Assembly: GCA_002269645.1 (NCBI GenBank)
Contig: NIVC01000319.1
Location: 124,001 to 188,000, forward strand
Reading direction: 5' to 3'
DNA: 64,000 nucleotides
DNA from: Macrostomum lignano
Lineage: Eukaryota
The notes beneath the pieces were generated by a model that had not been told where the DNA came from, made no database searches, and saw nothing but the letters and a program-made list of their open reading frames with translations. Made by a program: the position numbers and the translations under genes. Shown here piece by piece: positions 3,227-38,539 of the stretch; the first letter of the stretch is position 1, and every line of letters begins with the position of its first letter.

Positions 3227-3447
3227 GCTGGCGACCCATCCAGTGGCTTCGGCCGAATTTGGGTATGCGGGTCTGGCTTGCCAGCCTGCAGGCCGTGGTA
3301 CTGCTTAACGTACCCCCTAATGCCTAAGGTGTTTGACCGTGCCGATGGGCTGGAAGGCCGGGGGGTTGTCCGGTCGCTAGCGGTCCTTTTCTTTTTCTTC
3401 TTTCCTCTTTCTTTTGTGACTCAGCTCACTCCTTCCCGCTTTCAGCT

Positions 3448-4913: not shown

Positions 4914-4915
4914 TA

Positions 4916-7900: not shown

Positions 7901-8620
7901 AAGGTTACGAGAGGAAAGACTATTGTCATCCACTCCGACAGCCAAGCGGCCTTACAGGCCCTTTGCCACACCACAACGAACTCCCGGACAGTCGCCGACT
8001 GCGCCCGGCAGCTCAACCTCCTGGCCAGAAGCAATACTGTCAGGCTGAAGTGGATCCCAGGGCACGCAGGGTTTCCGGGGAACGAGCTGGCAGACACCCT
8101 CGCCAAGAGGGGCGGCTCTGGCTCTTTTTTCGGCCCTGCCCCCCTGGTCCCTATGCCCTTGACAGTCATCAATCGTCAGATCGACGACTGGGCTGACTCC
8201 CTCCACAGGGACAGATGGGCGGGCACCCAAAACTGCCGGCAATCTCGTGCCGCGGTTCCTTGCCCGTCTCACAGGCTCAGAAACATCCTTCTGAACCAGA
8301 ATCGGAAGGATATTCGAGCCCTTGTCATGACCCTTACCGGCCATGGCTACCTCGCCAGGCACTGCTTCCTCCGAGGCGACCTCGAGAGCGAAATTTGCCC
8401 CTTTTGCGAGTGCGACAATGAAGATGCTCAGCACTTTGTCTGTCACTGCCCTTTCTTTAACAGAGACCGGCTACGCTACCTCGGGCCGAACCCGTCCATT
8501 GACGAGGTTTGCCAGCCCGACAGCATCCCACGGCTCATCCAGTTCCTTCGGGCGACTAGACGAGCCAGTTTCTTCCCAACGGAAGATCACGCTGCAGGAC
8601 GGACCGGCGGACCACCCTGA
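4916..8620 (+). CDS. LINE ORF2: AP endonuclease, reverse transcriptase, RNase H, C-terminal CCHC knuckle
   Basis: QINLQH, LVQEPW, GDINAHH, SDH (APE); KAPGPDG, FRPISL, PQGGVLSP, YADD (RT); YTDGS, VFQNEVLAI, SDSQAAL, WIPGHAG..GNELAD (RNase H); CPFC..ED..HFVCHC. Uninterrupted; first ATG at 4916. Confidence 0.97.
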   Translation: MISNQGIHCLQINLQHCVAASVNLMRYAELDKPGLILVQEPWTLRGKPQNAPAGYNCFYTYPREANQPPRACIFASKTLSAWLRSDLSNRDICVIQSEDLLPGKTTLIASVYLPGDAAVVPRALATLVELCSAKNYELMVAGDINAHHTHWGSTGINQRGEDLLAYVASTTLEFCNSGSTPTFDNGRWSEVIDATLATPRLYQSIGAWRVLPVSSLSDHKFISFNLMAARSATRVMWRRNARNTDWETFGLALKEFHRSPGQPSTITSCREADECATVLTETLTAAFEASCPLKAYKGKKSAPWWNPELGNLRRRAKRLHRRATKTKSPADQTAYHEAIHEFKRQVRNAKAQKWRQYCEELEGSRPTSRVVKALTLDKMSKLSSVKRTDGTSTDNPGETLDVMLTAFFPNEPANQTTPDHSEGGHALAASIITEDRIVRAANSFKPFKAPGPDGIVPALLREAVKCPGFLRKLCSLLRACITLGYVPQAWTEAKVIFIPKPGRPDYHSIKSFRPISLTSSLVKLMERLVLWRLLSVELKNKPLSENQHAFRAGRSTESALHVLVDKLEKAVLGSGFALGIFLDIIGAFDNVLFEAFRRALCERLTHSHLTRWIMYMISHRTATASLLGYQRTVPVCKGSPQGGVLSPVLWNMVIDELLRDVRPDPILKVGYADDVTAVASGPSPDTLRDLLQNFIYAAEQWADRCGLRLSETKTAAIMFTSRTKWQIRPLTLYGREIPFCKQTKCLGITLDHRLNWSPHVQTKAKKAFAVLAQLRRAVGTTWGLTPKRLWWIYTAMVRPAISYGGLIWASALQIKTCLEALRRAQGRACRTIMSAPPSAPYDGLNAFLNIPPLDIFVRREAAKTARRLADAGIRIQPHRAMAKRKLLPHADLCLKDLRDSGGLHVLSDGEPRTLNLFQRYKVTIPSRDAANDHWNFQEVHCYTDGSIKDGRAGFGVCIIINGRVIATHAQHTGRLSTVFQNEVLAISSCAAELNAKVTRGKTIVIHSDSQAALQALCHTTTNSRTVADCARQLNLLARSNTVRLKWIPGHAGFPGNELADTLAKRGGSGSFFGPAPLVPMPLTVINRQIDDWADSLHRDRWAGTQNCRQSRAAVPCPSHRLRNILLNQNRKDIRALVMTLTGHGYLARHCFLRGDLESEICPFCECDNEDAQHFVCHCPFFNRDRLRYLGPNPSIDEVCQPDSIPRLIQFLRATRRASFFPTEDHAAGRTGGPP

Positions 8621-9474
8621 CCGGCCCCACGCCTCTGCCTGTCTGCGGGCCTTCAGGGGCTAGCGGAATGGGCGACCCTCGCCTCCCCGCTGTGTCTACG
8701 GACCACCCTGCAGCTAAGTCAAGTAAGCAGCAGCGGCTACGTGCAGCTTTGAGAAGCTCGGGACGAAACAGTCAAGCGAGGACGAGCTCATCACCATGCG
8801 GCTCGTGGACGGACTCGCCTCTGTGGACCACAAGCATAGACTGTTGGAGAGAATGCAAGCTACCGACATGCTGCTAAACGAGGTGCTGCAAACACTTGAG
8901 CAACTTGAGCAAATCCGCTGCTACAACACCAGCACCGGGGCCGCTGCCAACACCGAGGCCAGCATCGCCTATGCAGGGCGGCGCGGCACGCCCCCACAGC
9001 CAGCGCCGGACACCAGACCACCGAGGAACATCAGCAAGACGAAGTGCCAATATTGCGGCGGTTTGCACCAGCAAGGCGCATGCCCTGCGTTCGGCAAGCG
9101 GTGCACCGCCTGCAACAAGAAAAACCACTTCGCTGCCGTATGCAGGTCCCGCACCGTGCATCTAGAGACCTGGGAGGAGAACGAAGGCGCCGAGATGGAG
9201 CGAGACACCGCCAACGTCTTCGTCATCAGACCGGAGCGCAGAGAGCGGAACGGCATTTTCCGGCAGGTAAAAATCAACGGCAAGGAGCTGCAAATGCAGG
9301 TAGATACGGGCGCTGATGTGAGTCTCATTCCACGGGGCCACTGGGAGACACTTGGATGCCCAGCACTGAGGAAATCCAGACGAATTCTGAGACAGTTCGA
9401 CGGATCGATCATAAAAACCCTGGGAGAGTTCACTGTTTACGTGGGATGACCAAGAAAAGTTCCGCACAGTCGAC

Positions 9475-12189
9475 TTGGTGGTCACAGCAGCGCGCAAGTC
9501 ACATGGACTGCTGGGTCTTGACAATCTGGATTGGAACCCCGAAGGCCAGGCAGCCAGTGCTCAAGATTCCGTAGTTCAACATCTCGATTGTCTGAAAGGT
9601 TTCCAGGCCAGGATCAAGCTGATTGAGGGTGCCAAGCCTTTCTACTGCGCAGCCAGAGCAGTGCCGCTGCACCTGCGTGACCGCGTCAATCAGGAGCTAA
9701 AGCGTCTCGTGACTGAGGGCATCATCGAGCCGGTGACGGAAGGCGGCAGCGAGTGGGCGTCCCCGATCGTCTGCGTCCTAAAACCTAATGGCAATGTCAG
9801 AATTTGCGCAGACTACAAGGCGGGGGTGAACCATCAGGTGTGCGGAGACACCTACCCCATGCCAACCGTCGAAACGATCTTCTCGGACGTTGCCGGAATG
9901 ACTGACTTTGCCACTCTCGACCTATCTGACGCCTACTTACAGATCGAGCTCGAGGAGAAAAGCAGGGAGGTCACCACGATTGCAACTCCTTTAGGGCTGT
10001 TCCGCTACACCCGATTAGTGCCTGGCCTTAAGTCAGCATCCGCCATCTTTCAAAAGGCAATGGAGACCACCCTCGAGGAGGTAAGCGGCAAGGTCATTTA
10101 TCAAGACGAAATCCTCATCGGAGGTCAATCTGCCGAGGGTCTCAAGGCCAAAGTTGATGAAGTAATCAAAACTCTACAGGCGGCCGGCATGAATATAAAT
10201 CTCGCCAAATCCAACCTGGGGGCCAAGACAGTCAAGTTCCTGGGCTACAGAATAAGCGCAGACGGAATCTCGCCGGACCCCGGCCTGGTCAGCAAAATCA
10301 TGGAGATCTCTGCGCCACGCGACCGTCGCCAGTTAGAGTCGTTCCTTGGTCTCTGCAATTTCTTCGGAAGGTTTGTCAACAACTATGCGCACGTTGTCGA
10401 GCATTTGAACCAGCTGCGCAAGAAGGGAGCGGAGTTTGTGTGGGGAGCTGCGCAAGAAGCGGCCTTCCACCAGCTGAAGAAGCTGCTGAGCTCCGGCCCG
10501 ATCATCCAGCCTTATGACCGAGCCAAAGAGACAACGCTGACGACAGACGCCAGTGAAAAGGCGGTGGCCGCCGTGCTCACGCAGGAAGGGCACCCCGTCA
10601 TCTACTTCAGCCGGCGATTGACACAGGCGGAGGCGCGCTACTCCAACATCGAGCGGGAGGCTCTGGCGATTGTTTGGGCGATGGAGAGGGCTCGGCAATT
10701 CCTTCTAGGCAAGCGTTTCACACTGCGAACGGACCACCGCCCTCTAGAGTTCCTGTTTGGAACAAGACAACAACTCCCCAAGGTCGCCAACGCTCGACTG
10801 CTTCGCTGGGCCATCCGCCTCATGGGGTTCGACTTCGCAATTGAGTACGTCCGAGGAGCCCAAATTCCGCACGCCGATGCGCTCTCCCGGCTCGACTTTG
10901 CCGACGTTCCGGACGACCAGGCTGAAGCTGCGACTCACCACCACCACCTGGTGCATTGGGCTGGTGAAAGCGTCATTGGTTGGAATGAGCTAGCAGAGGA
11001 GACAAAACGTGACAGGCTGCTAGCAGATGTCATGCGCAGGATAGCCGGAAATCGCTGGTCAGGCTGCTCCCCTGCAGAGCGGCCCTTCAAGGCAATTCGT
11101 CACGCGCTTACAATAGACGACTCGGTAGTGTGCTACGGAGACCGGCCGGTCATTCCCTCGTCTTTGAGAAGCCGCGTCCTGGAGTTGGTGCACAGCGGGG
11201 CGCACCCCGGTGCCTCGAGCACACGAGCGCTGGTCCGCAACTCCGTCTGGTGGCCAGGCTACTGCGGCGACGTGGAAGGATTCGTCCGTGCCTGCCACAC
11301 CTGCGCCAAGCAACGCCAAAGCGGCCACAGCAGCGTCCATCAATGGCCGGCCGACTCTGAACCCTGGGGACGCATCCACATGGACCACGCTCACGTCCCA
11401 AAGGTCGGGCTCCTGCTGGTCCTGGTCGACGCCATGTCCGCCTGGCCGGAGGCCATCCGAGTGCCGGACAAGAGCGCCGCGACCGTCAGGAAGGTCCTCC
11501 AGGAGGTCTTCGCCCGCAATGGAGTTCCCCGAACCCTGGTGAGTGACAATGCTGCTGAATTTCATGATGAAGGGTTGGTGAGTTGGCTGAGCAGAATTGG
11601 CTGCCGCGCTGTGAAAACTCCGCCATACCACCCCCAGTCGAACGGCCTGGCTGAGCGCATGGTGCAGACGATCAAGGTGGCCCCGGCGGGCTGGGACCAG
11701 CAGGAGTCGTACGACGCGTTCCTCGCGCGGATTCTGCTAAACTACCGATGCGTGCCGCATGCCGGAAGAGAGTTCAGTCCAGCGCAGCTGATGGGCAGGC
11801 AGCTGCGGAACTCCATCACCATGAGAACAGCAATCCGGTCCGAGGTGTGGTACGCCCCAAGGAGAGGCGCGATCCCGGAAAAGGCAGAATTCCTAGCGCA
11901 GAAGGGATCCAACACGGCGCTGATCGTGCGACAAGGCAACAGAGTCACACTCGCCCACCTTGACCAACTTCGGCGACACGAGCCTGACAACAATGAAGGC
12001 GGCGCGACTGCGACAACCGACCTGAACGGTGACCTCCGCTCCGAGGGGGCGGCGAAGCCCGCCGACCTGCCAACAGTGACGCCCTGCAGCGACGGACCTC
12101 CGGTCTCGGCCACGTCAGAGCAGGTGGAGAACCAGCCGGCGGCGAGCTCAGTCCCGAGTACCCCGAGGCCGGTGGCCACGACCGCTTAG
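9475..12189 (+). pseudogene. pol (RT-RNase H-integrase) of LTR copy 1, C-terminally frameshifted
   Basis: WASPIV, RICADYK, TTDAS, YSNIEREALA, H..HPG...C..C, IHMD, VSDN, SNGLAERMV. RT motif reads YQDE; a C4 run (C5 in copy 2) near 12161 truncates the tail. Confidence 0.9.
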
Positions 12190-12293
12190 CGGAGAGCAGA
12201 GCCGGAACTGACAAGGCGACTGCGGCTCAGAGACCGAGCTACAACCTCCGAGCGAATCGAGGCGTGCCCCCGTTGCGATTCGAAGGGGGGAGA

Positions 12294-12650
12294 TGAGGTG
12301 CCGGGCGTGTTTTGATGTACTGCACTGCACCTGACTCACCTGAGTCCAATTATGAGTAACTCTAACTAGCCAGCCAGCCTAACTAACCAAACCGGCCTAC
12401 TCCGGTGTACGCTGGTCTGCGTACTTTCTCTCTCCCCCCCTTGACATGATAATATTCAGTAGTGATCGATTCTGAGTTTTAAGCCCACTTACTTGTTTGT
12501 CTTTTAAGCCTATATATTGGTCTCGCCACCTACCACCTCGTAACTCACTGTCATTGCAATATTTCGCTTGCCTCAAATACACAACCTCGTGCTTGACTCA
12601 AACCAAGCCCACGGGCGGCCTTGTCATCGTTTACTGGGCTCGACTTGACA
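12294..12650 (+). repeat. LTR2 (shared middle LTR, hybrid of LTR3 and LTR1)
   Basis: 357 bp; preceded by the PPT and followed by the PBS/ATG. Confidence 0.96.
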
Positions 12651-13723
12651 ATGGCGTCGCAAGCAAACAACTCCGAACTAAACTTGGATGACCCAGACAC
12701 AGCCGAAGCCTGGCTGCTCAGCTTTGCGGCTGCCGCACGAACCAAGAAACTGACGGACACAGAAGAAGATCGGCAGATCACCGACCTATTCCTCGCCAGG
12801 GCAGGTCTCAAGGCACTGAGAACGCTGTCCCTCATGGCTGCCCCGGCCAGCCTGGAGAAAAAACATTTGTACAAATCCGAGACATCATCAAGGAGACAAT
12901 CCGGCCCAAGAAGCGCCTCGACATTGCCGAACGAGCGAAATTCCTCGCCCTCAGGCAGGACCCAGGCGAAAGTGTCGCCTCCTACTACCGCCGACTCCGT
13001 GCAGCAGCGGCTACGTGCAGCTTTGAGAAGCTCGGGACGAAACAGTCAAGCGAGGACGAGCTCATCACCATGCGGCTCGTGGACGGACTCGCCTCTGTGG
13101 ACCACAAGCATAGACTGTTGGAGAGAATGCAAGCTACCGACATGCTGCTAAACGAGGTGCTGCAAACACTTGAGCAACTTGAGCAAATCCGCTGCTACAA
13201 CACCAGCACCGGGGCCGCTGCCAACACCGAGGCCAGCATCGCCTATGCAGGGCGGCGCGGCACGCCCCCACAGCCAGCGCCGGACACCAGACCACCGAGG
13301 AACATCAGCAAGACGAAGTGCCAATATTGCGGCGGTTTGCACCAGCAAGGCGCATGCCCTGCGTTCGGCAAGCGGTGCACCGCCTGCAACAAGAAAAACC
13401 ACTTCGCTGCCGTATGCAGGTCCCGCACCGTGCATCTAGAGACCTGGGAGGAGAACGAAGGCGCCGAGATGGAGCGAGACACCGCCAACGTCTTCGTCAT
13501 CAGACCGGAGCGCAGAGAGCGGAACGGCATTTTCCGGCAGGTAAAAATCAACGGCAAGGAGCTGCAAATGCAGGTAGATACGGGCGCTGATGTGAGTCTC
13601 ATTCCACGGGGCCACTGGGAGACACTTGGATGCCCAGCACTGAGGAAATCCAGACGAATTCTGAGACAGTTCGACGGATCGATCATAAAAACCCTGGGAG
13701 AGTTCACTGTTTACGTGGGATGA
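12651..13723 (+). pseudogene. gag-protease of LTR copy 2 (no LINE), frameshifted
   Basis: Same A6 frameshift (near 12858-12863) and the same stop inside the protease (TGA 13721-13723) as copy 1. Confidence 0.9.
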
Positions 13724-13748
13724 CCAAGAAAAGTTCCGCACAGTCGAC

Positions 13749-16571
13749 TTGGTGGTCACAGCAGCGCGCAAGTCACATGGACTGCTGGGTCTTGACAATC
13801 TGGATTGGAACCCCGAAGGCCAGGCAGCCAGTGCTCAAGATTCCGTAGTTCAACATCTCGATTGTCTGAAAGGTTTCCAGGCCAGGATCAAGCTGATTGA
13901 GGGTGCCAAGCCTTTCTACTGCGCAGCCAGAGCAGTGCCGCTGCACCTGCGTGACCGCGTCAATCAGGAGCTAAAGCGTCTCGTGACTGAGGGCATCATC
14001 GAGCCGGTGACGGAGGGCGGCAGCGAATGGGCGTCCCCGATCGTCTGCGTCCTAAAACCTAATGGCAATGTCAGAATTTGCGCAGACTACAAGGCGGGGG
14101 TGAACCATCAGGTGTGCGGAGACACCTACCCCATGCCAACCGTCGAAACGATCTTCTCGGACGTTGCCGGAATGACTGACTTTGCCACTCTCGACCTATC
14201 TGACGCCTACTTACAGATCGAGCTCGAGGAGAAAAGCAGGGAGGTCACCACGATTGCAACTCCTTTAGGGCTGTTCCGCTACACCCGACTAGTGCCTGGG
14301 CTTAAGTCAGCATCCGCCATCTTTCAAAAGGCAATGGAGACCACCCTCGAGGAGGTAAGCGGCAAGGTCATTTATCAAGACGAAATCCTCATCGGAGGTC
14401 AATCTGCCGAGGGTCTCAAGGCCAAAGTTGATGAAGTAATCAAAACTCTACAGGCGGCCGGCATGAATATAAATCTCGCCAAATCCAACCTGGGGGCCAA
14501 GACAGTCAAGTTCCTGGGCTACAGAATAAGCGCAGACGGAATCTCGCCGGACCCCGGCCTGGTCAGCAAAATCATGGAGATCTCTGCGCCACGCGACCGT
14601 CGCCAGTTAGAGTCGTTCCTTGGTCTCTGCAATTTCTTCGGAAGGTTTGTCAACAACTATGCGCACGTTGTCGAGCATTTGAACCAGCTGCGCAAGAAGG
14701 GAGCGGAGTTTGTGTGGGGAGCTGCGCAAGAAGCGGCCTTCCACCAGCTGAAGAAGCTGCTGAGCTCCGGCCCGATCATCCAGCCTTATGACCGAGCCAA
14801 AGAGACAACGCTGACGACAGACGCCAGTGAAAAGGCGGTGGCCGCCGTGCTCACGCAGGAAGGGCACCCCGTCATCTACTTCAGCCGGCGATTGACACAG
14901 GCGGAGGCGCGCTACTCCAACATCGAGCGGGAGGCTCTGGCGATTGTTTGGGCGATGGAGAGGGCTCGGCAATTCCTTCTAGGCAAGCGTTTCACACTGC
15001 GAACGGACCACCGCCCTCTAGAGTTCCTGTTTGGAACAAGACAACAACTCCCCAAGGTCGCCAACGCTCGACTGCTTCGCTGGGCCATCCGCCTCATGGG
15101 GTTCGACTTCGCAATTGAGTACGTCCGAGGAGCCCAAATTCCGCACGCCGATGCGCTCTCCCGGCTCGACTTTGCCGACGTTCCGGACGACCAGGCTGAA
15201 GCTGCGACTCACCACCACCACCTGGTGCATTGGGCTGGTGAAAGCGTCATTGGTTGGAATGAGCTAGCAGAGGAGACAAAACGTGACAGGCTGCTAGCAG
15301 ATGTCATGCGCAGGATAGCCGGAAATCGCTGGTCAGGCTGCTCCCCTGCAGAGCGGCCCTTCAAGGCAATTCGTCACGCGCTTACAATAGACGACTCGGT
15401 AGTGTGCTACGGAGACCGGCCGGTCATTCCCTCGTCTTTGAGAAGCCGCGTCCTGGAGTTGGTGCACAGCGGGGCGCACCCCGGTGCCTCGAGCACACGA
15501 GCGCTGGTCCGCAACTCCGTCTGGTGGCCAGGCTACTGCGGCGACGTGGAAGGATTCGTCCGTGCCTGCCACACCTGCGCCAAGCAACGCCAAAGCGGCC
15601 ACAGCAGCGTCCATCAATGGCCGGCCGACTCTGAACCCTGGGGACGCATCCACATGGACCACGCTCACGTCCCAAAGGTCGGGCTCCTGCTGGTCCTGGT
15701 CGACGCCATGTCCGCCTGGCCGGAGGCCATCCGAGTGCCGGACAAGAGCGCCGCGACCGTCAGGAAGGTCCTCCAGGAGGTCTTCGCCCGCAATGGAGTT
15801 CCACGAATCCTGGTGAGTGACAATGCTGCTGAATTTCATGATGAAGGGTTGGTGAGTTGGCTGAGCAGAATTGGCTGCCGCGCTGTGAAAACTCCGCCAT
15901 ACCACCCCCAGTCGAACGGCCTGGCTGAGCGCATGGTGCAGACGATCAAGGTGGCCCCGGCGGGCTGGGACCAGCAGGAGTCGTACGACGCGTTCCTCGC
16001 GCGGATTCTGCTAAACTACCGATGCGTGCCGCATGCCGGAAGAGAGTTCAGTCCAGCGCAGCTGATGGGCAGGCAGCTGCGGAACTCCATCACCATGAGA
16101 ACAGCAATCCGGTCCGAGGTGTGGTACGCCCCAAGGAGAGGCGCGATCCCGGAAAAGGCAGAATTCCTAGCGCAGAAGGGATCCAACACGGCGCTGATCG
16201 TGCGACAAGGCAACAGAGTCACACTCGCCCACCTTGACCAACTTCGGCGACACGAGCCTGACAACAATGAAGGCGGCGCGACTGCGACAACCGACCTGAA
16301 CGGTGACCTCCGCTCCGAGGGGGCGGCGAAGCCCGCCGACCTGCCAACAGTGACGCCCTGCAGCGACGGACCTCCGGTCTCGGCCACGTCAGAGCAGGTG
16401 GAGAACCAGCCGGCGGCGAGCTCAGTCCCGAGTACCCCCGAGGCCGGTGGCCACGACCGCTTAGCGGAGAGCAGAGCCGGAACTGACAAGGCGACTGCGG
16501 CTCAGAGACCGAGCTACAACCTCCGAGCGAATCGAGGCGTGCCCCCGTTGCGATTCGAAGGGGGGAGATGA
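13749..16571 (+). CDS. pol (RT-RNase H-integrase) of LTR copy 2
   Basis: 940-aa ORF with RT, RNase H and integrase motifs; YQDE replaces YxDD; the stop TGA is the first three bases of LTR3. Confidence 0.9.
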   Translation: MVVTAARKSHGLLGLDNLDWNPEGQAASAQDSVVQHLDCLKGFQARIKLIEGAKPFYCAARAVPLHLRDRVNQELKRLVTEGIIEPVTEGGSEWASPIVCVLKPNGNVRICADYKAGVNHQVCGDTYPMPTVETIFSDVAGMTDFATLDLSDAYLQIELEEKSREVTTIATPLGLFRYTRLVPGLKSASAIFQKAMETTLEEVSGKVIYQDEILIGGQSAEGLKAKVDEVIKTLQAAGMNINLAKSNLGAKTVKFLGYRISADGISPDPGLVSKIMEISAPRDRRQLESFLGLCNFFGRFVNNYAHVVEHLNQLRKKGAEFVWGAAQEAAFHQLKKLLSSGPIIQPYDRAKETTLTTDASEKAVAAVLTQEGHPVIYFSRRLTQAEARYSNIEREALAIVWAMERARQFLLGKRFTLRTDHRPLEFLFGTRQQLPKVANARLLRWAIRLMGFDFAIEYVRGAQIPHADALSRLDFADVPDDQAEAATHHHHLVHWAGESVIGWNELAEETKRDRLLADVMRRIAGNRWSGCSPAERPFKAIRHALTIDDSVVCYGDRPVIPSSLRSRVLELVHSGAHPGASSTRALVRNSVWWPGYCGDVEGFVRACHTCAKQRQSGHSSVHQWPADSEPWGRIHMDHAHVPKVGLLLVLVDAMSAWPEAIRVPDKSAATVRKVLQEVFARNGVPRILVSDNAAEFHDEGLVSWLSRIGCRAVKTPPYHPQSNGLAERMVQTIKVAPAGWDQQESYDAFLARILLNYRCVPHAGREFSPAQLMGRQLRNSITMRTAIRSEVWYAPRRGAIPEKAEFLAQKGSNTALIVRQGNRVTLAHLDQLRRHEPDNNEGGATATTDLNGDLRSEGAAKPADLPTVTPCSDGPPVSATSEQVENQPAASSVPSTPEAGGHDRLAESRAGTDKATAAQRPSYNLRANRGVPPLRFEGGR

Positions 16572-16925
16572 GGTGCCGGGCGTGTTTTGATGTACTGCAC
16601 TGCACCTGACTCACCTGAGTCCAATTATGAGTAACTCTAACTAGCCAGCCAGCCTAACTAACCAAACCGGCCTACTCCGGTGTACGCTGGTCTGCGTACT
16701 TTCTCTCTCCCCCCCTTGACATGATAATATTCAGTAGTGATCGATTCTGAGTTTTAAGCCCACTTACTTGTTTGTCTTTTAAGCCTATATATTGGTCTCG
16801 CCACCTACCACCTCGTAACTCACTGTCATTGCAATATTTCGCTTGTCTCAAATACACAACCTCGTGCTTGACTCAAACCAAGCCCACGGGCGGCCTTGTC
16901 ATCGTTTACTGGGCGCGACTTGACA
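16569..16925 (+). repeat. LTR3 (3')
   Basis: 357 bp, followed by the TSD CGTTT. Confidence 0.96.
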
Positions 16926-17016: not shown

Positions 17017-17235
17017 CTGACAGTCAATTGTCACTGACAGTCAATTGTCACTGGCAGTCAATTGTCACTGGCAGTCAATTGTCACTGACAGTCAATTGTC
17101 ACTGGCAGTCAATTGTCACTGACAGTCAATTGTCACTGACAGTCAATTGTCACTGACAGTCAATTGTCACTGACAGTCAATTGTCACTGACAGTCAATTG
17201 TCACTGACAGTCAATTGTCACCGACTAGTCAATTG
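17017..17235. repeat. 18-bp minisatellite (CAGTCAATTGTCACTGA/G), reverse complement of the 1054-1616 array
   Basis: About 12 tandem units. Confidence 0.93.
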
Positions 17236-17558
17236 TTGCATACATTCTATTAGCACTTAACAGACGATTTGTTACCTCCTGCCATGCACTCCGCAATCAC
17301 ATATGAGGCTAAATTTTGCTTATGTTCGGAGATAAAAAGCAGATTTTTAATCTGGTTAATGCTTTTTTAAACAAAACTGGGCCTTCAGCTAAATCTGAAA
17401 TTGTGTGACTGGTGAGCATCTCTGTATTGCGCTTGTTTTCAGATTCTTGAGCAGCACTGCAGCGCCCCATAGGCTAGCGGGTTTTTGTTCATTTTTTGTC
17501 TCGATTAATTGCTCCAAAATGAGATGCTACGTGTAAATCGTGACATGAAAGCAATGAA

Positions 17559-17707
17559 ATTTCATTTGAGACAGCGCCATTTCATTTGAGACTGTGCCAT
17601 TTCATTTGAGGCAGCGCCATTTCATTTGAGACAGCGCAATTTCATTTGAGACAGCGCTATTTCATTTGAGACAGCGCAATTTCATTTGAGACAGCGCAAT
17701 TTCATTT
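17559..17707. repeat. 20-bp minisatellite (ATTTCATTTGAGACAGCGCA)
   Basis: About 7 units. Confidence 0.9.
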
Positions 17708-17910
17708 AAATTGTCATACAGATGAAGTAAAACAAAAATATCTTCAAAGCACAATTTAGATTTTTTATTTATTTTGCATCGAGAATCTGCAGCCTCGATC
17801 CGAAGATATTTTTCCATTCGATGGTTTATTTGGTAATATTAATAACAGCAGGGGCACATTCTGACGTTTTTATCTGATAGTCCCGATTATATATATGAGT
17901 GTAAAACTTG

Positions 17911-18389
17911 TCATTCTTTTTTATCTGTGTCGGAGCTCTTCATAGCCCCAGGGTGGCGACCAAAGCAGCCGATTGGGTGGTAGAAGCAGCCGAGCCAATC
18001 ATTGTGTGGCTGTTTTGCAGCCTTCTGCGACCGGCGCTTTTCGATAGCGAAATACGGCTTGGTCAGCTGGCGACGAGTCTCGGCATAGCCGAACAAAGAG
18101 TCATTCAGATCCTTCAGATCCTCGGTTGGCCATCCGTCCAGATTATGCAGAGCTGCTTTGAGCTCTGCAGAAAACTGCAAATACGATTGGGTGGAGATTC
18201 ACAGTTTCAAACGGGATGTTCCTTTATTTAATAATGCCATAACTACTGAAAATCTATGGTGCAACTTACGAGTATGTCAGAACCATCCATTGGGTTCTGG
18301 CAGAGTGGCCAAGCATCCATCATGTTGATTGTACACAGGAGCAAGCAGGCTGACAACAGGGCTGGGATGAATGCACGCACGCCTCGCAT
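17911..18389 (-). CDS. Neuropeptide precursor, allatostatin-C/somatostatin-like; exons 18389-18270 and 18174-17911 (127 aa)
   Basis: Exon 1 encodes the hydrophobic signal-peptide-like MRGVRAFIPALLSACLLLCTINMMDA; 95-nt phase-0 GTAAG...TTGCAG intron; exon 2 has a KRR cleavage site then ...DWLGCFYHPIGCF-GR (C-x6-C-F plus amidation signal). Confidence 0.8.
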
Positions 18390-18839
18390 TTTCAATGTGT
18401 TGGTTCCTGCCTGCTCTCCGTCTTATTAGAAAGAGACTTTCCGGTGCAGTTAAAGCAGACATTTTTCCAGATTTGTTCCTTATATACCTTTTGGGGAAAT
18501 TTAGTATATTTCCCATTACCCACTCCTAAAATGCACAGCCAATCATCATTACAGATCGCTTCTTCATCCACCTGGGAGTTCCATTTAGAAGCATTTTTAG
18601 TGTAAAATGTTTTAAATACAAACTAATTTATTTAAAAATAATCCTGTAGTTCCAGCATCCTGCCGGCCGGTCGCGGACACAACTCGACTCGAAAAAACGA
18701 CACCAAAGTGCAAAGCAATCGCATGGCCTGGTATATATTTGTTATCATGATCGTTTTCTACAATACAAAGTGTGGTGTATGATAATAGGTTTTATTGGAT
18801 TGGATTGGATTTTGTTTTACTTGCGATCTACTTGTGCTT

Positions 18840-18887
<48 letters not shown>

Positions 18888-19995
18888 TTAGCTTCAAGGC
18901 CAGGTCGCGAATGAACGCCATGCCGCCATCCGAATACGGGGCGCCGGCGTCAGCCAGCAGGCAGTCGACGAAACGCCGAGTGCGCGCCTACCCCCGCCGG
19001 TGCAACGTTAGCAGCAGCACCTCCTGCACCTGGGCAGTACGACTCAGTGCGGATGATTTGGCCTGCCAGCTGGAGTCGCCGACGGCGCAACAGGTCGCTT
19101 GGACGGACCAGGCCGGCGCGGCGATACAAAGCCGCGTTGGTCACTCGCTCGTAGCCGATCTTGAAGGCGGCGCACAGCAGTCCAGCGTACGCTGCGTCAA
19201 CTTGTTGCTCCAGCGACTGCGTCAGCGTCCAGGTCTCGGCGTTGTACAGCAGGACGGTCTCGATCACCGCCTGGAATAACGCCGCCCTCTGGCGGTCAGG
19301 TAAGGCCTCGGACTGCAGGACTGCCCTCAGAACGAAAGGCAGCCCAGGCAAGCCCGCGGCGACGCCGCAGATCCTCGCGGACTCCGGGAACCAGACCGCC
19401 GAGGTAGACGAACTGCTGACAACGCGGAAGCTCTGTCGCCTGTCCATCAGCGCCTCGGCACAAAATCTCTGCCTTGATGTCGTCCGGCACGCAGAGCACG
19501 ACGGTCTTCTGCGTGTTGACCACAAGGCCAACACTCGCTGCAACAGCAACCAGCTTGTCCAGTTGTCGCTGAGCGCCCTCGACAGTTGAGGACAGCAGGG
19601 CGAGATCGTCGGCGTAACTAAGCACGCTGAGCCGCCTCTCCGGTTGACGTCGACCCACGCGTCGCCGCAACAGAAAGCTGTCGTCGTTGATAGGAAGAGC
19701 GGTCCGCAACACCCAGTTAAGCACCAGAACGAACAGGAACGGCGCAAGCGTATCTCCTTGAAGCACGCCGGAGGATGTCTCAAAGAAGTCCCGTCCGGTG
19801 TTGAAACAGCCGCTTTCGTATCACGGTACATCTTTATGATTGGCGGAAATCAGCTGCTCTGGCACATTGTACGCACGGAACACCTTTGGGAGCACAGAGC
19901 TGACGACCGAGTCGAATGCCTTCTTGAAATCTATGAAGATAACAATTAGGATCGACTGGCGTATCCCTGCTTCCTCGATGTGCTTTTGCTTACAC
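18840..19995 (-). mobile_element. 5'-truncated, degenerate RTE-type non-LTR element with a (TTG)n tail
   Basis: IDFKKAFDS, QGDTLAPFLF, SYADDLALL, FVYLGG, LLYNAETWTL and LRRRRLQLAG spread over several frames; (AAC)n at 18840-18887 marks the 3' end. Confidence 0.88.
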
Positions 19996-27050: not shown

Positions 27051-30000
27051 ATGGCAACCAAGGGTGGAGACAGCCAGATGTACAAGTTTTCCATCCTGGC
27101 GCCAGAAGTTTACTGCCAGGCAATAAAATCTGCAGAGCCCGTGAAGCAAGATGATGCTGCTTACAGATTTGGTCTGTTTCTCAAGCAGTGGGCTGAAGAA
27201 GTCTTTGGCATGAGCTGCTTTGTACCATCAAGTTCTGGTGCAGCTTTTATTGAGAATTTCAACACTTTTGAGAGCGACTTTCTTGCAAAGTCAGAATATT
27301 GCATCATCATTATTAGTGAGGTTGCTGCCAAACCGTTGAATAGGTTCCTGGCTAGACTGCTCGTGTTTGTCACCATGCGTGCAATGTGGCGCAGTCGCTT
27401 CATCTTTATTGCGCTGGGCGAGTTCGAAGGCTTAAAGAAGTTGCACTTGGACGTTTCCGTGCACGATCTAATTATCTTTAAATCTCGCACCGAGGAGGGA
27501 TGGATGGTGGAGACTGAGTGCTGGAAGGCTCTCTACTTCATACTCAACATTTCCTGGGCATCCTTAGGCGACTCGAATGGGACAGCAGAGAATTCTAATG
27601 GCGCTCAGTCAAGCGAGATTACTGAATCAACCGACCAGCTTGACAAAGCCTTCAAGCTGATTCTGATGACTTCGAGGAGTTACTCGAAAGAGTCTAATGA
27701 TGACGGTCGGGGCGAAGCATTTGCTCAGTTTTTGCAGCAAAAATCTGAAAGCGAGTTTAGTATGTCCTGCAAGATACCAAGCTCATCTGGTAGCGCTTTT
27801 ATCACCGATTTTAACAAGTTTGAGAATGAGTTTCTGCGCGTAAGTGAGTATTGCTTGATTGTCGTGTCAGAGGAGTCCGTGCGCCGCTTCCGCATCTTCT
27901 TACCGCGCCTTCTGGTGTTTTTGACCAGGCGAAGTGTGTGGAGCAACCGCTTCATAATTGCATGCGTTGGTAATGTTGATCTACGCGAGTCCGAGGTTGA
28001 CTTTCTGACCCATCCTCCTGTATATTTTACATCCACTGAGGCTGAGTCTTGGTCAACGGAGGTTCAATCCTGGCAAATTTTGTATCGCATCCTGCGCATA
28101 ACGTGGGCGCCGACTGATGCCGAGAGTCAGCTTGCAAAAATTTCTTTCGATGCCGATCAATTCTACCACACTGTGGTTTTTACGTCGATTTTTTATTCGA
28201 CATCTGCCGAAGAGCAACCGGACGATTGCACCGGTTGGCAGTTTGCCTCTTATTTTTCCACGAAAATGAGCAACGAGTACAAGCTCATGGTTTATGTACT
28301 GACTGCTAGAGATGCCGTACAGGTTGAAACTCTGGATGAACTAGAGATAAAGTACTTACAAAAGTGCGGAAATCTGGTTTTTATCGTGACTGAAGAGTCA
28401 GTAGTGCAGTTCACTCAGTTTCTAACCCGTCTGCAGCAGTTCCTATCTAGACGCGTTCAGTGGCGCAATCGACTCACGCTGGTTTGCGTAGGCAACGTGC
28501 AGTTGGATGAGAGCCATTTAGCTTTGTTTGGCTCTTCTGTAATTACCATCTACTCATCTGAGCGCTCCAGCTGGACAAGTATCGAGTCGAGCACTTGGAC
28601 CACAATTGTGACTTTAGTGCGTCAGAATGAGATCATTACTCAGGAGGAACTCGTTGAGCAGGCCACTTCACTGCCTGTCAACGCATCAAGTGTAAGCAAC
28701 ATAGACGGTGCAACGAAGTCTTTGGACGTTAAAAGCACTAGCCAAACCGTTGTCACGGGAGGAAACTCGAGGAATGCAACAGAAACATCATCGTCATCGA
28801 CTCTCACAACTACAACAACTCGCACCACCAACACAACCCACACGACCTCTTCAATAGACGTTACGGATTCCTCTACGCAGGAAAAGCAAGAGCAGGAACG
28901 TCAGAAGCTGGAACAAGAACGGCAGGATCATGAGCGTCTGAAGAAGCAGGAGCGTCAGAAGCGGGAGCAGGAGCGTCAGGAACAGGAGCGTCAGACGCGG
29001 GAGCAGGAGCGTCAGAAACAGGAGCGTCAGAAGCGGGAGCAGGAGCGTCAGGAACAAGAGCGTCAGACGCGGGAGCACGAGCGTCAGGAACAGGAGCGTC
29101 AGGAACAAGAGCGTCAGGAACAAGAGCGTCAGAAGCGGGAGCAGGAGCGTCAGGAACAAGAGCGTCAGAAGCGGGAGCAGGATCGTCAGAAGCGGGAGCG
29201 TCAGGAACAAGAGCGTCAGAAGCGGGAGCAGGAGCGTCAGGAACAAGAGCGTCAGAAGCGGGAGCAGGAGCGTCAAGAGCAAGAGCGTCAGAAGCGGGAG
29301 CAGGAGCGTCAGGAACAAGAGCGTCAGAAGCGGGAGCAGGAGCGTCAGGAACAAGAGCGTCAGAAGCGGGAGCGGGAGCGTCAGGAACAAGAGCGTCAGG
29401 AGCAGGAGCGTCAAGAACAAGAGCGTCAGAAGCGGGAGCAGGAGCGTCAGGAACAAGAGCGTCAGAAGCGGGAGCAGGAGCGTCAGGAACAAGAGCGTCA
29501 GAAGCAGGAGCAGGAGCGTCAAGAACAAGAGCGTCAGAAGCGGGAGCAGGAGCGTCAGGAACAAGAGCGTCAAAAGAAGGAACAGGAGCGTCTTGAGCAG
29601 CAACAGCAACAAAGCCAGACACATTCGCAAACTAGCTGGACGACTACTACTGTAACTAAAACTACAACAAAGACAACTAAAAATCAGGAAAAGCTGAACG
29701 TATCTAACGTTCCTAATGTTGATGATGTTTCTCGCCATTCCGGTGAAGACAGCAGCAGTGAATCGGATGATAGTAATCGCAAAGGCGAAATTGGTGACTC
29801 CCGACGCACCAGTGGTCGCTCATCCTTGGTTGTTCGAGTTATGCGAGTAATTCACACTCGCATTGTGCGCATCACGATCTTGATTCATTCCACCACCGTA
29901 GTCACGATCACGCGCATTGTGACTTTGATTGGCGCTCCGGTCAGAATGGTTCGCTACACTGCGCTCTACGCCAGCCAGCAGAGTTGGCTGCTCCGGATCT

Positions 30001-30494
30001 TGACTATTATTCGTCGGGTTTTGCGCCTGACAAGCGAGACAATTGGCTACGTTTCTGGCAGTCGCATTGCCATCACGAGCGGTGGCGACCGCGATGATGA
30101 CGTCCTGATTGGCGACTCCGATCGGCGCAGCCGATATCTCCTGCTTCCAGCCTGGCTAGTGCGCTTTGTATTCTACGCGTCCGGCCGCTTCATCGCCTGT
30201 CGGACCGAGGCCGAGGCCAAGGCTAAGCTGACCCAGCAGGTCAAAGGTGGCGGCGGCGCTGAGGTCCCAGATGCTACTGGCGTTTCAGCAATACAGACTG
30301 TCACCGATTGGCGCGATGAGAACTGCGCAATGTGTCATCAACTGGTTGTTGACGGTCTGGCCCGCGTGAGAGGCGTCGGGGAAGGCTGCCCTTACACCGG
30401 CATAAACTTCTGGGCGACGATGACCAGTAAGGCTGCAAAGTCTCTTGTGCATGTTTTTAGTCTGTTGATTCTTGCCCATGGTCAAGTTGGTTGA
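27051..30494 (+). CDS. Intronless 1147-aa protein: three tandem TIR/SEFIR-like alpha/beta domains, Thr-rich linker, QERQ-repeat coiled coil, hydrophobic/basic C-terminus
   Basis: Long open frame; three mutually similar blocks of about 155 aa (aa 11-170, 201-352, 372-525) with SEYC(I/L)IxxSE, FLxRL, WxxR and a final W-x-x-W helix. The TIR assignment is an inference from the pattern. Confidence 0.75.
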   Translation: MATKGGDSQMYKFSILAPEVYCQAIKSAEPVKQDDAAYRFGLFLKQWAEEVFGMSCFVPSSSGAAFIENFNTFESDFLAKSEYCIIIISEVAAKPLNRFLARLLVFVTMRAMWRSRFIFIALGEFEGLKKLHLDVSVHDLIIFKSRTEEGWMVETECWKALYFILNISWASLGDSNGTAENSNGAQSSEITESTDQLDKAFKLILMTSRSYSKESNDDGRGEAFAQFLQQKSESEFSMSCKIPSSSGSAFITDFNKFENEFLRVSEYCLIVVSEESVRRFRIFLPRLLVFLTRRSVWSNRFIIACVGNVDLRESEVDFLTHPPVYFTSTEAESWSTEVQSWQILYRILRITWAPTDAESQLAKISFDADQFYHTVVFTSIFYSTSAEEQPDDCTGWQFASYFSTKMSNEYKLMVYVLTARDAVQVETLDELEIKYLQKCGNLVFIVTEESVVQFTQFLTRLQQFLSRRVQWRNRLTLVCVGNVQLDESHLALFGSSVITIYSSERSSWTSIESSTWTTIVTLVRQNEIITQEELVEQATSLPVNASSVSNIDGATKSLDVKSTSQTVVTGGNSRNATETSSSSTLTTTTTRTTNTTHTTSSIDVTDSSTQEKQEQERQKLEQERQDHERLKKQERQKREQERQEQERQTREQERQKQERQKREQERQEQERQTREHERQEQERQEQERQEQERQKREQERQEQERQKREQDRQKRERQEQERQKREQERQEQERQKREQERQEQERQKREQERQEQERQKREQERQEQERQKRERERQEQERQEQERQEQERQKREQERQEQERQKREQERQEQERQKQEQERQEQERQKREQERQEQERQKKEQERLEQQQQQSQTHSQTSWTTTTVTKTTTKTTKNQEKLNVSNVPNVDDVSRHSGEDSSSESDDSNRKGEIGDSRRTSGRSSLVVRVMRVIHTRIVRITILIHSTTVVTITRIVTLIGAPVRMVRYTALYASQQSWLLRILTIIRRVLRLTSETIGYVSGSRIAITSGGDRDDDVLIGDSDRRSRYLLLPAWLVRFVFYASGRFIACRTEAEAKAKLTQQVKGGGGAEVPDATGVSAIQTVTDWRDENCAMCHQLVVDGLARVRGVGEGCPYTGINFWATMTSKAAKSLVHVFSLLILAHGQVG
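28880..29600 (+). repeat. Coding 15/21-bp repeat (QERQE / QERQKRE)
   Basis: CAGGAGCGTCAG... units in frame within the 1147-aa ORF. Confidence 0.95.
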
Positions 30495-38417: not shown

Positions 38418-38539
38418 CTTCTGGCACTCTCCTGACACATTAGGCACTCTCCCAAAACATCCTATTGGGCACTCTCCCGACACATGTATTGAGAACTCTC
38501 CCGATGCACCATATTGGTCACTCTCCCTAGATGTCATAT

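What the first reader, a model, noticed from the sequence alone, without database searches (positions are those of the whole stretch)
17911..18389. Hidden allatostatin-C/somatostatin-like neuropeptide gene
Seen: a 40-codon signal-peptide exon absent from the ORF track splices in frame to give a 127-aa precursor: signal, acidic propeptide, KRR, then SQKAAKQPHNDWLG-CFYHPIGCF-GR. Established: arthropod AstC ends CYFNPISCF with a disulfide ring of the same C-x6-C-F spacing, and a Gly before a basic residue signals amidation. Inference: a divergent amidated AstC-family peptide (Y/F swap, His for Asn) with a short C-terminal extension peptide.
Basis: partly seen in the sequence, partly recalled or inferred. 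Interest (0 to 1): 0.75.

Follow-up and report, generated by a model that had tools for sequence, protein, structure and literature searches.

The report
Unannotated flatworm allatostatin-C-like neuropeptide gene
A small two-exon gene in the flatworm Macrostomum lignano, missing as such from the protein databases searched, encodes a secreted precursor whose C-terminal disulfide-ring peptide closely resembles allatostatin-C, an inhibitory hormone family for which I found no report in flatworms.

Summary
On the minus strand, ATG 18389 opens a 40-codon exon ending at a GTAAGT donor. A 95-nt phase-0 intron ends in TTTGCAG. Exon 2 (18174-17911) completes a 127-aa protein: hydrophobic signal-like N-terminus, acidic propeptide, KRR, then SQKAAKQPHNDWLGCFYHPIGCF-GR plus a 14-aa tail. 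A TATATAA box and an AATAAA signal flank the unit.

The window is Macrostomum lignano, a flatworm, not an arthropod.

The C-x6-C-F spacing alone is common by chance (about 6 per window). The loop CFYHPIGCF, however, shares 5/9 residues with published Drosophila and C. elegans ASTC loops. The peptide sits singly at the C-terminal end behind a dibasic site. [quoted passage not shown] The conjunction is very unlikely by chance.

Weak points:
- No transcript data were available.
- The only relative is a 93%-identical second copy, buried like this one in a chimeric transposon-fused database model.
- The usual loop Asn is His.
- Amidation depends on a monobasic Gly-Arg site.

Verdict: most likely a real ASTC-type neuropeptide gene, a new member of a known family. 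I found no published flatworm ASTC.

The parts
18480..18486 (-). TATATAA box, 91-97 nt upstream of the start codon (candidate core promoter)
   Evidence: Pattern scan; sequence. Function is inferred.
18270..18389 (-). Coding exon 1: ATG plus 39 codons (residues 1-40), ending at a GTAAGT donor
   Evidence: tblastn of the spliced protein recovers it.
18312..18389 (-). Signal-peptide-like segment (residues 1-26): MRGVR n-region, uncharged hydrophobic core AFIPALLSACLLLCTI, possible cleavage after MDA
   Evidence: Kyte-Doolittle 9-residue means reach 2.7 and the segment passes a heuristic signal-peptide test. No trained predictor was available, so the cleavage site is inferred.
18175..18269 (-). 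Intron, 95 nt, phase 0, GTAAGT...TTTGCAG
   Evidence: The same acceptor (18174) is used by the two database gene models P0003 and P0004.
17911..18174 (-). Coding exon 2: residues 41-127 plus TGA stop (17911-17913)
18031..18039 (-). KRR tribasic prohormone-convertase site (residues 86-88). A second dibasic RR lies at residues 74-75.
   Evidence: Cleavage is inferred from general prohormone processing; PC2-dependent processing was shown in a planarian (PMC2953531).
17962..18030 (-). Predicted mature peptide SQKAAKQPHNDWLGCFYHPIGCF (residues 89-111), with Cys103 (17986-17988) and Cys110 (17965-17967) forming the six-residue-loop disulfide
   Evidence: The loop is 5/9 identical to published Drosophila and C. 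elegans ASTC loops. This stretch is 100% conserved in the second copy P0004.
17956..17961 (-). Gly112-Arg113: candidate amidation donor plus monobasic cleavage site
   Evidence: Amidation is inferred. The chimeric database models place a weak donor (G|GTCGCC) here instead.
17914..17955 (-). C-terminal extension HPGAMKSSDTDKKE (residues 114-127)
17825..17830 (-). AATAAA polyadenylation signal, about 80 nt after the stop codon
   Evidence: Use is inferred.

Best explanation
This is a compact, intact, two-coding-exon gene of Macrostomum lignano. It encodes a 127-aa prepropeptide of the allatostatin-C (ASTC, 'PISCF-type') neuropeptide family.

Proposed mechanism:
1. The N-terminal about 26 residues direct the protein into the secretory pathway (inferred from composition).
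2. A prohormone convertase cuts after Lys86-Arg87-Arg88, and carboxypeptidase trims the basic residues (inferred; PC2-dependent processing is shown in planarians).
3. Cys103 and Cys110 close an eight-residue ring (inferred by analogy with ASTC).
4. Cleavage after Gly112-Arg113 lets peptidylglycine amidating enzyme convert Gly112 into a C-terminal amide. The product would be SQKAAKQPHNDWLGCFYHPIGCF-NH2, monoisotopic mass 2643.23 Da. This step is the least certain, about 55%. The alternative is a non-amidated form extended to the KK site.
5. The peptide then acts as a neurohormone or neuromodulator on a rhodopsin-gamma, somatostatin-receptor-related ASTC-type GPCR, probably with an inhibitory action (inferred from the family).

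The sequence, the splice logic and the precursor architecture are shown. Expression, processing and the receptor are inferred.
For: Gene structure: ATG, GTAAGT donor, 95-nt intron, TTTGCAG acceptor, in-frame continuation, stop, TATATAA upstream and AATAAA downstream. Exon 2 cannot be translated without an upstream exon.

Precursor architecture:
- positively charged n-region plus a 16-residue uncharged hydrophobic core
- acidic propeptide, pI 4.5
- KRR site, then a single peptide copy at the C-terminal end

Family criteria from the literature that are met:
- Two Cys with six residues between them and Tyr/Phe after the second Cys (PMC5996578). The loop is always six residues in protostome ASTC (PMC9048919).
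- Conserved PISCF motif (PMC8514136); this peptide has PIGCF.
- Aromatic-x-Pro motif and an aromatic first loop residue, as in arthropod and nematode ASTC (PMC8851493, PMC9048919).
- A phase-0 intron in the N-terminal proregion as a shared SS/ASTC gene feature, and the only intron in spiralian ASTC genes (PMC7536072, PMC9048919). Here there is one phase-0 intron after codon 40.
- Amidated ASTC exists in scallops (PMC5996578).

Loop similarity: identity to Drosophila CYFNPISCF and C. elegans CFFNPITCY is 5/9 each. Recognised family members share 3-7/9 with one another.

Multiplied together, assuming independence, they give about 1e-7 to 3e-7 per 64-kb window. That is well below one expected occurrence in a genome of about 0.76 Gb (genome size from my own knowledge).

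Second copy: P0004 is 93% identical over exon 2. All differences (one 3-aa indel and two substitutions) lie in the propeptide, and RRQLTKPYFAIEKRRSQKAAKQPHNDWLGCFYHPIGCF is unchanged.
Against: - No transcript, peptide or receptor data could be consulted.
- An exhaustive HMMER scan of 1.84 billion representative proteins found no relative other than the two chimeric M. lignano models. Pfam gave nothing.
- A small profile HMM built from six published ASTC peptides scored the locus only 3.9 bits (E = 5.4 within the window, not the top hit). The family assignment therefore rests on motif plus architecture, not on statistically significant alignment.
- The Asn present in most ASTC loops is His here.
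- The amidation site is monobasic, with no Lys/Arg 3-6 residues upstream and a Cys nearby.
- The conservation pattern between the two copies is not statistically significant (three events).
- The gene sits in a transposon- and minisatellite-rich region.
Confidence: 0.7

Rival explanations
1. It is a real secreted, disulfide-ring peptide gene, but lineage-specific. Its resemblance to ASTC would be convergent, and it would act through an unrelated receptor or serve a non-neuronal role such as a gland or reproductive secretion.
For: No significant alignment to any ASTC precursor was found. The small ASTC profile scored only 3.9 bits. The loop Asn is missing. Published flatworm peptide surveys report mostly families with little similarity to other bilaterians, and none reports ASTC (PMC2953531; PMC9042389). 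Koch et al. state that ASTC has no strictly conserved motif, so short-motif matches are weak evidence (PMC9048919).
Against: Several independent features agree with ASTC at once: loop size, a terminal aromatic residue, Pro-Ile, C-terminal single-copy position behind a dibasic site, and a single phase-0 proregion intron.
Confidence: 0.17
2. It is not a functional gene. The ORFs, splice-like sites and ASTC-like motif would be a chance conjunction, or a decaying remnant in a repeat-rich region.
For: There is no expression evidence. The locus lies between a retrotransposon nest (ending at 16925), minisatellites (17017-17707) and a LINE fragment (18950-19831). C-x6-C-[FY] is itself common by chance. 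Loop scores of 40 or more occur about 0.015 times per window, which means on the order of a hundred chance loop matches genome-wide.
Against: The joint probability of loop, processing sites and an in-frame signal-peptide exon is about 1e-7 per window. The reading frame is intact across both exons. TATA and poly(A) signals sit in the right places. A second copy keeps the peptide region unchanged.
Confidence: 0.08
3. It belongs to the excitatory-peptide/CCHamide family. The stretch C-x6-C-F-G-R-H resembles the arthropod CCHamide pattern C-x6-C-[WY]-G-x-H, with an aromatic residue and a His inside the loop.
For: The peptide reads GCFYHPIGCFGRH. EP/CCHamide peptides have two Cys, an aromatic residue and often a His between them, and Gly residues after the second Cys (PMC6617912).
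Against: EP/CCHamide precursors carry the peptide directly after the signal peptide. Here about 60 residues and a KRR site intervene. EP/CCHamides end in Gly plus GKR/GKK/GRK after a GG or GA pair. Here His114 is followed by Pro-Gly-Ala-Met, with no basic residue after the Gly. The C-terminal His is reported only for arthropods and onychophorans (PMC6617912).
Confidence: 0.04

Closest known systems
Ecdysozoan allatostatin-C (Manduca/Drosophila PISCF-type ASTC; C. elegans ASTC-type peptide)
   Same: Six-residue Cys loop, aromatic first loop residue, aromatic-x-Pro-Ile core, and Phe/Tyr directly after the second Cys. Loop identity is 5/9. The peptide is a single copy at the C-terminal end of the precursor behind a basic site. 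A phase-0 intron lies in the proregion (PMC7536072).
   Different: The loop Asn is His, and Ser/Thr is Gly. The second and third loop positions are swapped (FY instead of YF/FF). The N-terminal extension is longer (14 residues before the first Cys). A Gly-Arg candidate amidation site and a 14-aa tail replace a free C-terminal Phe. The second, phase-2 intron of ecdysozoan ASTC genes (PMC9048919) is absent.
Trochozoan (mollusc/annelid) ASTC, e.g. Lottia SHVMCLVNLISCF, Capitella EPVQCLVNIVSCW, scallop GHIQCLVNLVACYamide
   Same: Same loop size, terminal aromatic residue and precursor layout. The gene has the single phase-0 intron typical of spiralian ASTC genes (PMC9048919). The scallop peptide is amidated (PMC5996578).
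   Different: Loop identity is only 2-4/9. Trochozoan loops begin Leu-Val-Asn and have an aliphatic residue where the flatworm keeps Pro (PMC8851493). In loop sequence the flatworm peptide is therefore closer to ecdysozoan peptides than to those of its fellow spiralians.
Arthropod allatostatin-CCC (from my own knowledge; Veenstra 2016, not read here)
   Same: A C-terminally amidated ...SCF-NH2 paralogue of ASTC, with a Trp three residues before the first Cys, as in NDWLGC.
   Different: The AstCCC loop has Ala where this peptide has Pro, and it keeps the Asn. It arose by a gene triplication within arthropods, so any resemblance is parallel, not orthologous.
Echinoderm SS1-type (ASTC-type) peptides
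   Same: Phe-x-Pro motif inside the Cys loop, and a phase-0 proregion intron (PMC7536072, PMC8851493).
   Different: Echinoderm loops have 10 residues and no aromatic residue after the second Cys. Their genes have an extra phase-1 intron.
Somatostatin / protostome SSRP-like (urotensin-II-like) peptides
   Same: A disulfide-ring peptide near the C-terminus of a small precursor, and a phase-0 proregion intron.
   Different: There is no WK motif. The loop is six residues, not four (SSRP-like, UII) or 10-15 (SS). The phase-1 intron that splits the mature peptide is absent (PMC9048919).

Membership tests
Allatostatin-C-type neuropeptide precursors | Two Cys separated by exactly six residues (always six in protostome ASTC; PMC9048919, PMC5996578) | tested here: met
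   Cys103 and Cys110, loop FYHPIG. By itself this spacing is not distinctive: 5.8 chance C-x6-C-[FY] matches are expected per window.
Allatostatin-C-type neuropeptide precursors | Aromatic residue (Phe/Tyr, rarely Trp) immediately after the second Cys (PMC5996578; alignment in PMC7536072 suppl. fig. 4) | tested here: met
   Phe111. Published examples end CF, CY or CW.
Allatostatin-C-type neuropeptide precursors | Loop motif: aromatic/aliphatic first residue, Phe-x-Pro (ecdysozoan, echinoderm) and the PISCF end (PMC8514136, PMC8851493, PMC9048919) | tested here: met
   The loop C-F-Y-H-P-I-G-C-F contains Tyr-x-Pro-Ile and ends PIGCF (4/5 of PISCF). It is 5/9 identical to the Drosophila and C. 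elegans loops, with a BLOSUM62 score of 42 against 31 for the next best 9-mer in the window.
Allatostatin-C-type neuropeptide precursors | Asn at the third loop position (present in 'most' ASTC peptides; the authors say no motif is strictly conserved; PMC9048919) | tested here: not met
   His106 occupies that position. All six published loops compared have Asn. This is a common feature rather than a defining one, but it is a real deviation.
Allatostatin-C-type neuropeptide precursors | Single peptide copy at the C-terminal end of the precursor, released at a basic cleavage site | tested here: met
   KRR at residues 86-88, one Cys-loop peptide at 89-111, and 16 residues to the stop. No second copy exists in the precursor or the window.
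Allatostatin-C-type neuropeptide precursors | N-terminal signal peptide | tested here: met
   This was a heuristic test only. There are two Arg in the first five residues and a 16-residue uncharged core with hydropathy up to 2.7, and the sequence passes the rule used. No SignalP-type predictor was available, so the cleavage site is uncertain.
Allatostatin-C-type neuropeptide precursors | Phase-0 intron interrupting the N-terminal proregion; the only intron in spiralian ASTC genes (PMC7536072, PMC9048919) | tested here: met
   There is one intron after codon 40 (120 nt, phase 0), just behind the signal peptide. The same papers note that this feature is shared with somatostatin-type genes. It supports the SS/ASTC superfamily but not ASTC specifically.
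Allatostatin-C-type neuropeptide precursors | Detectable precursor-level sequence similarity to known ASTC precursors (BLAST/CLANS linkage) | tested here: inconclusive
   The exhaustive HMMER scan returned only two M. lignano models and two spurious repeat proteins. The six-peptide profile HMM gave 3.9 bits. No set of full ASTC precursors was available for a CLANS-type test.
Allatostatin-C-type neuropeptide precursors | Conservation of the Cys residues and cleavage sites in orthologues | tested here: inconclusive
   Only a second M. lignano copy could be compared (P0004, 93% identical, peptide region unchanged). No sequences from other flatworms were reachable.
Allatostatin-C-type neuropeptide precursors | Activation of an ASTC-type (somatostatin-receptor-related, rhodopsin-gamma) GPCR | not testable with these tools
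   This needs receptor identification in M. lignano and a cell-based assay.
Excitatory peptide / CCHamide | Peptide located directly after the signal peptide (PMC6617912) | tested here: not met
   About 60 residues of propeptide and a KRR site separate them.
Excitatory peptide / CCHamide | GG or GA between the second Cys and an amidated C-terminus marked by GKR/GKK/GRK (PMC6617912) | tested here: not met
   The sequence after Cys110 is F-G-R-H-P-G-A-M-K. There is no Gly followed by a dibasic site after the His.
Somatostatin / SSRP-like (urotensin-II-like) | WK motif within the Cys loop; loop of 4 (SSRP-like/UII) or 10-15 residues (SS) (PMC9048919) | tested here: not met
   The loop FYHPIG has six residues and no Trp-Lys.
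Somatostatin / SSRP-like (urotensin-II-like) | Three coding exons, with a phase-1 intron splitting the mature peptide (molluscan/annelid SSRP-like genes; PMC9048919) | tested here: not met
   The whole mature peptide lies on exon 2, and the only intron is phase 0.

The most novel reading that the evidence does not exclude
This would be the first allatostatin-C-type neuropeptide identified in Platyhelminthes. Its loop (aromatic-aromatic-x-Pro-Ile) is of the ecdysozoan/echinoderm kind rather than the Leu-Val-Asn kind of molluscs and annelids. If so, the Phe-x-Pro-Ile loop would be the ancestral protostome state, possibly the ancestral nephrozoan state, and the trochozoan loop a later derivation. 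It would also supply a ligand for deorphanising flatworm somatostatin-receptor-like GPCRs, including those of parasitic species.
Probability: 0.5. Interest if true: 0.55.

Novelty: new member of a known kind. Interest (0 to 1): 0.45.

Why it matters
ASTC is said to occur in most protostome phyla. I found no report of it in flatworms, whether in planarian peptidomics, helminth reviews or the two recent SS/ASTC evolution papers. One review lists somatostatin-type peptides in helminths as 'unknown'.

A genuine flatworm ASTC would matter in four ways:
- It would fill a phylogenetic gap.
- It would inform the debate on how the ASTC loop evolved, because it looks ecdysozoan-like inside Spiralia.
- It would give a testable ligand for orphan flatworm GPCRs, a receptor class of interest as anthelmintic targets.
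- It shows that short neuropeptide genes can be lost inside chimeric transposon-fused gene models.

It is not a new kind of system, and a specialist would be interested rather than astonished.

Tried and rejected
1. Word-index protein search with the 127-aa product found no hit. Pfam found no family at E <= 10.
2. The exhaustive HMMER scan returned four hits. P0003 and P0004 are chimeric M. lignano gene models of 3023 and 2396 aa. They string exon 2 together with antisense transposon ORFs over more than 40 kb of the minus strand, and they leave the exon at a weak donor right after ...PIGCF. I treat them as annotation artefacts. They are useful only for the shared acceptor and for the second copy's sequence. 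P0005 and P0006 are repeat proteins and were rejected.
3. No DNA for the second copy could be obtained, so no dN/dS could be computed.
I did not pursue it by another route.
5. The metagenome scan gave two soil contigs sharing only the octamer HNDWLGCF in a bacterial ORF with no second Cys. This is chance produced by the pattern pre-filter.
6. A PIGCFGRVP match at 38442-38468 lies inside a 27-bp minisatellite and is chance.
7. A profile HMM of six published ASTC peptides did not single out the locus. It is too short and is dominated by the trochozoan LVN loops.
8. Supplementary files were searched for full ASTC precursor sets. They are not held as text, or hold only accession numbers. The planarian prohormone supplements contain no ..GCF/..SCF peptide.
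9. McVeigh et al. 2009, the flatworm neuropeptide survey that included M. lignano ESTs, is not held. Prior description there cannot be excluded.
10. The CCHamide/EP and SSRP-like readings were rejected on precursor layout and motifs.

Full report
**What is in the sequence**

- Exon 1 runs 18389-18270, an ATG plus 39 codons. It encodes MRGVRAFIPALLSACLLLCTINMMDAWPLCQNPMDGSDIL and abuts GTAAGT.
- The intron is 95 nt (18269-18175) and ends TTTGCAG.
- Exon 2 runs 18174-17911 and adds 87 codons and TGA.

The 127-aa product has these parts:
- Two Arg in its first five residues, followed by a 16-residue uncharged hydrophobic core with hydropathy up to 2.7.
- An acidic propeptide, pI 4.5.
- RR at residues 74-75 and KRR at 86-88.
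- SQKAAKQPHNDWLGCFYHPIGCF at 89-111, with Cys103 and Cys110.
- Gly112-Arg113, then a 14-residue tail.

Exon 2 has no in-frame ATG ahead of the peptide, and its ORF is closed just upstream of the acceptor, so it can only be translated through an upstream exon. The next AG, 10 nt downstream, would break the frame. TATATAA lies at 18486-18480 and AATAAA at 17830-17825. The unit is therefore a complete small gene of about 660 bp.

**Organism and surroundings**

The window is not arthropod. A U-box exon at 45734-46696 is 100% identical to a GenBank protein of Macrostomum lignano, a free-living flatworm.

The gene sits in repeat-rich DNA:
- Downstream on the minus strand lies a retrotransposon nest that ends at 16925. 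It has Ty3/gypsy-type pol ORFs, a LINE ORF and three LTR copies.
- Two minisatellites follow at 17017-17236 and 17558-17707.
- Upstream lies a LINE reverse-transcriptase fragment at 18950-19831.
- The interval 17800-18520 itself is unique in the window.

**Is it more than chance?**

Simulated windows contain 5.8 such matches and the real one has 4. The detail is what counts:
- The pattern C-aromatic-aromatic-x-P-[ILV]-x-C-[FY] occurred in none of 300 simulated windows.
- The loop scores 42 (ungapped BLOSUM62) against the best of six published ASTC loops. The next best 9-mer in the window scores 31. Scores of 40 or more arise 0.015 times per simulated window.
- Among C-x6-C-[FY] matches, about 0.9% also have a dibasic site 3-25 residues upstream together with a stop or Gly-[KR] behind.
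- A signal-peptide-like, in-frame, phase-0 exon ending at GTRAG 40-300 nt upstream of a given AG occurs at 7e-4 in simulations and 2.5e-3 at real AG positions.

Multiplied together, assuming independence, this gives roughly 1e-7 to 3e-7 per window. That is far below one expected event in a genome of about 0.76 Gb (genome size from my own knowledge).

**Relatives**

The spliced protein has no Pfam family and no word-index hits. An exhaustive HMMER scan of 1.84 billion representatives found only two real relatives, both M. lignano gene models.

P0003 (3023 aa) is 100% identical over residues 41-111. Mapped back, it runs from about 41800 to 1 on the minus strand and strings together antisense transposon ORFs. 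P0004 (2396 aa) comes from a second copy of the locus. Both models enter exon 2 at the same acceptor (18174). Both miss exon 1, joining a LINE fragment instead, and both leave at a weak donor right after ...PIGCF. No protein matching the spliced product turned up in the two protein-collection searches.

P0004 differs from the window copy by one 3-aa deletion and two substitutions, all in the propeptide. RRQLTKPYFAIEKRRSQKAAKQPHNDWLGCFYHPIGCF is unchanged. This is consistent with constraint on the peptide, but with three events it is not significant. No DNA of the second copy could be fetched. A metagenome scan gave only a chance bacterial octamer match.

**Comparison with the ASTC family**

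Published definitions are as follows:
- Two Cys with six residues between them and a Tyr/Phe after the second Cys (PMC5996578).
- In protostomes the loop is always six residues. Most members have an Asn. Many have Phe-x-Pro. The first loop residue is aromatic in arthropods and nematodes and aliphatic in molluscs and annelids (PMC9048919).
- In lophotrochozoan ASTC and in arthropod AstCC/CCC the Pro is replaced by Val/Leu/Ile or Ala (PMC8851493).
- A phase-0 intron in the N-terminal proregion is shared by SS/ASTC genes, and spiralian ASTC genes have only that intron (PMC7536072, PMC9048919).

The M. lignano gene meets the loop size, the terminal Phe, the Pro-Ile core (PIGCF against PISCF), the aromatic first loop residue, the C-terminal single-copy layout behind KRR, and the single phase-0 intron. 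It does not have the Asn (His106 instead).

I compared the loop with those printed in PMC7536072 supplementary figure 4 and in PMC5996578:

| Published loop | Identity to CFYHPIGCF |
|---|---|
| Drosophila AstC, CYFNPISCF | 5/9 |
| C. elegans, CFFNPITCY | 5/9 |
| Drosophila AstCC | 3/9 |
| Lottia, Capitella and scallop | 2-4/9 |

Accepted members share 3-7/9 with one another. The flatworm loop therefore falls within the family's range. Notably, it is nearer the ecdysozoan type than the type of its fellow spiralians.

A profile HMM built from those six short peptides scored the locus only 3.9 bits and did not rank it first in the window. Alignment statistics alone therefore do not establish membership.

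**Rival families**

EP/CCHamide peptides also have two Cys with an aromatic residue and often a His between them, and C-x6-C-F-G-R-H resembles the arthropod CCHamide end. However, their precursors carry the peptide directly after the signal peptide and end in GG/GA plus Gly-dibasic (PMC6617912). Neither holds here.

Somatostatin/SSRP-like peptides need a WK motif, loops of 4 or 10-15 residues, and, in molluscs and annelids, a phase-1 intron splitting the peptide (PMC9048919). None of these holds.

**Processing**

Cleavage at KRR is conventional. PC2-dependent prohormone processing has been shown in a planarian (PMC2953531).

Amidation of Phe111 needs cleavage after the single Arg113. Nemertean peptidomics found monobasic Arg sites usually accompanied by a second basic residue 3-6 positions upstream (PMC8557429). 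Here there is none; the nearest is His106, seven positions upstream. A Cys also lies close by.

Amidated ASTC does exist (scallop ...ACYamide, PMC5996578), so amidation is plausible, but I rate it at only about 55%. The alternative is a longer, non-amidated peptide running to the KK site. Predicted masses are given.

**Prior knowledge in flatworms**

- I found no report of ASTC in flatworms. Searches combining allatostatin-C or somatostatin with flatworm terms returned none.
- The planarian prohormone paper mentions neither family, and its supplements hold no ...GCF/...SCF peptide.
- A helminth review lists somatostatin in helminths as 'Unknown'.
- The two SS/ASTC evolution papers do not sample Platyhelminthes.
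- The main text of a polyclad larva atlas names AstA, but no AstC, among the flatworm's precursors; its full list is in tables I could not read.
- McVeigh et al. 2009 and Koziol et al. 2016 could not be read, so earlier description cannot be excluded.

**Verdict**

This is most probably a genuine ASTC-type neuropeptide gene that does not appear under its spliced form in the protein collections searched. Confidence is about 0.7 for the family assignment and about 0.9 that it is a real secreted-peptide gene. It is a new member of a known kind, of moderate interest.

Noticed in passing
window 2256-16925: There is a retrotransposon nest here. Three LTR copies of about 357 bp lie at 2256-2612, 12294-12650 and 16569-16925, 98.9-99.7% identical. 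They bracket two near-identical Ty3/gypsy-type internal regions (gag-protease ORFs 8796-9449 and 13070-13723; RT-RNaseH-integrase ORFs 9475-12189 and 13749-16571). A LINE ORF with endonuclease, RT and RNase H (4910-8620) lies inside the first unit. This looks like an LTR-internal-LTR-internal-LTR tandem with a nested LINE.
   Followed up: partly
window 18950-19831 (-): An ORF of 293 aa looks like the C-terminal part of a LINE reverse transcriptase (...LLYNAETWTLT...). It lies about 560 bp upstream of the neuropeptide gene. The second-copy model P0004 carries the same fragment at 94-97% identity, so it predates the duplication of the locus.
   Followed up: partly
window 1-41812 (-): Two database proteins (P0003, 3023 aa; P0004, 2396 aa) are chimeric gene models running over more than 40 kb of the minus strand. 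They join antisense transposon ORFs, repeat-derived ORFs and neuropeptide exon 2. They illustrate how the real small gene was lost in annotation.
   Followed up: yes
window, many sites, e.g. 1054-1617, 17017-17236, 33575-34495, 40390-41344, 43122-44070, 44546-45664, 47707-50069, 57695-58622: The density of minisatellite arrays is very high: about 30 distinct arrays in 41 Tandem Repeats Finder rows, with periods mostly of 12-43 bp and up to 112 copies. These arrays explain the extreme GC/AT skews at 32-36 kb and 42-44 kb, and many of the long 'ORFs' that are open in three frames. The 17-bp arrays at 1054-1617 and 17017-17236 are the same repeat in opposite orientation on either side of the retrotransposon nest.
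   Followed up: partly
window 27051-30494 (+): A 1147-aa ORF with no Pfam match contains three repeats of about 180 aa (each with ...S(S)SG.AFI..FN.FE.EFL..SEYC.I..SE...). These are followed by a long (EQERQK)n stretch encoded by a 36-bp tandem repeat, and then a Ser/Thr-rich region. Its function is unknown.
   Followed up: no
window 45734-46696 (+): An exon ends in the first part of a U-box domain. It is 100% identical to M. lignano protein BOX15_Mlig034571g3. This identifies the species.
   Followed up: yes
window 51141-52151 (-): An ORF hits Pfam 'Keratin, high sulfur B2'. It coincides with a 30-bp tandem repeat (51240-51876), so the match is probably a low-complexity artefact.
   Followed up: partly
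window about 18840-18890: An (AAC)n-type microsatellite produces poly-Asn, poly-Gln and poly-Thr runs in three overlapping ORFs, between the neuropeptide gene's promoter region and the LINE fragment.
   Followed up: no
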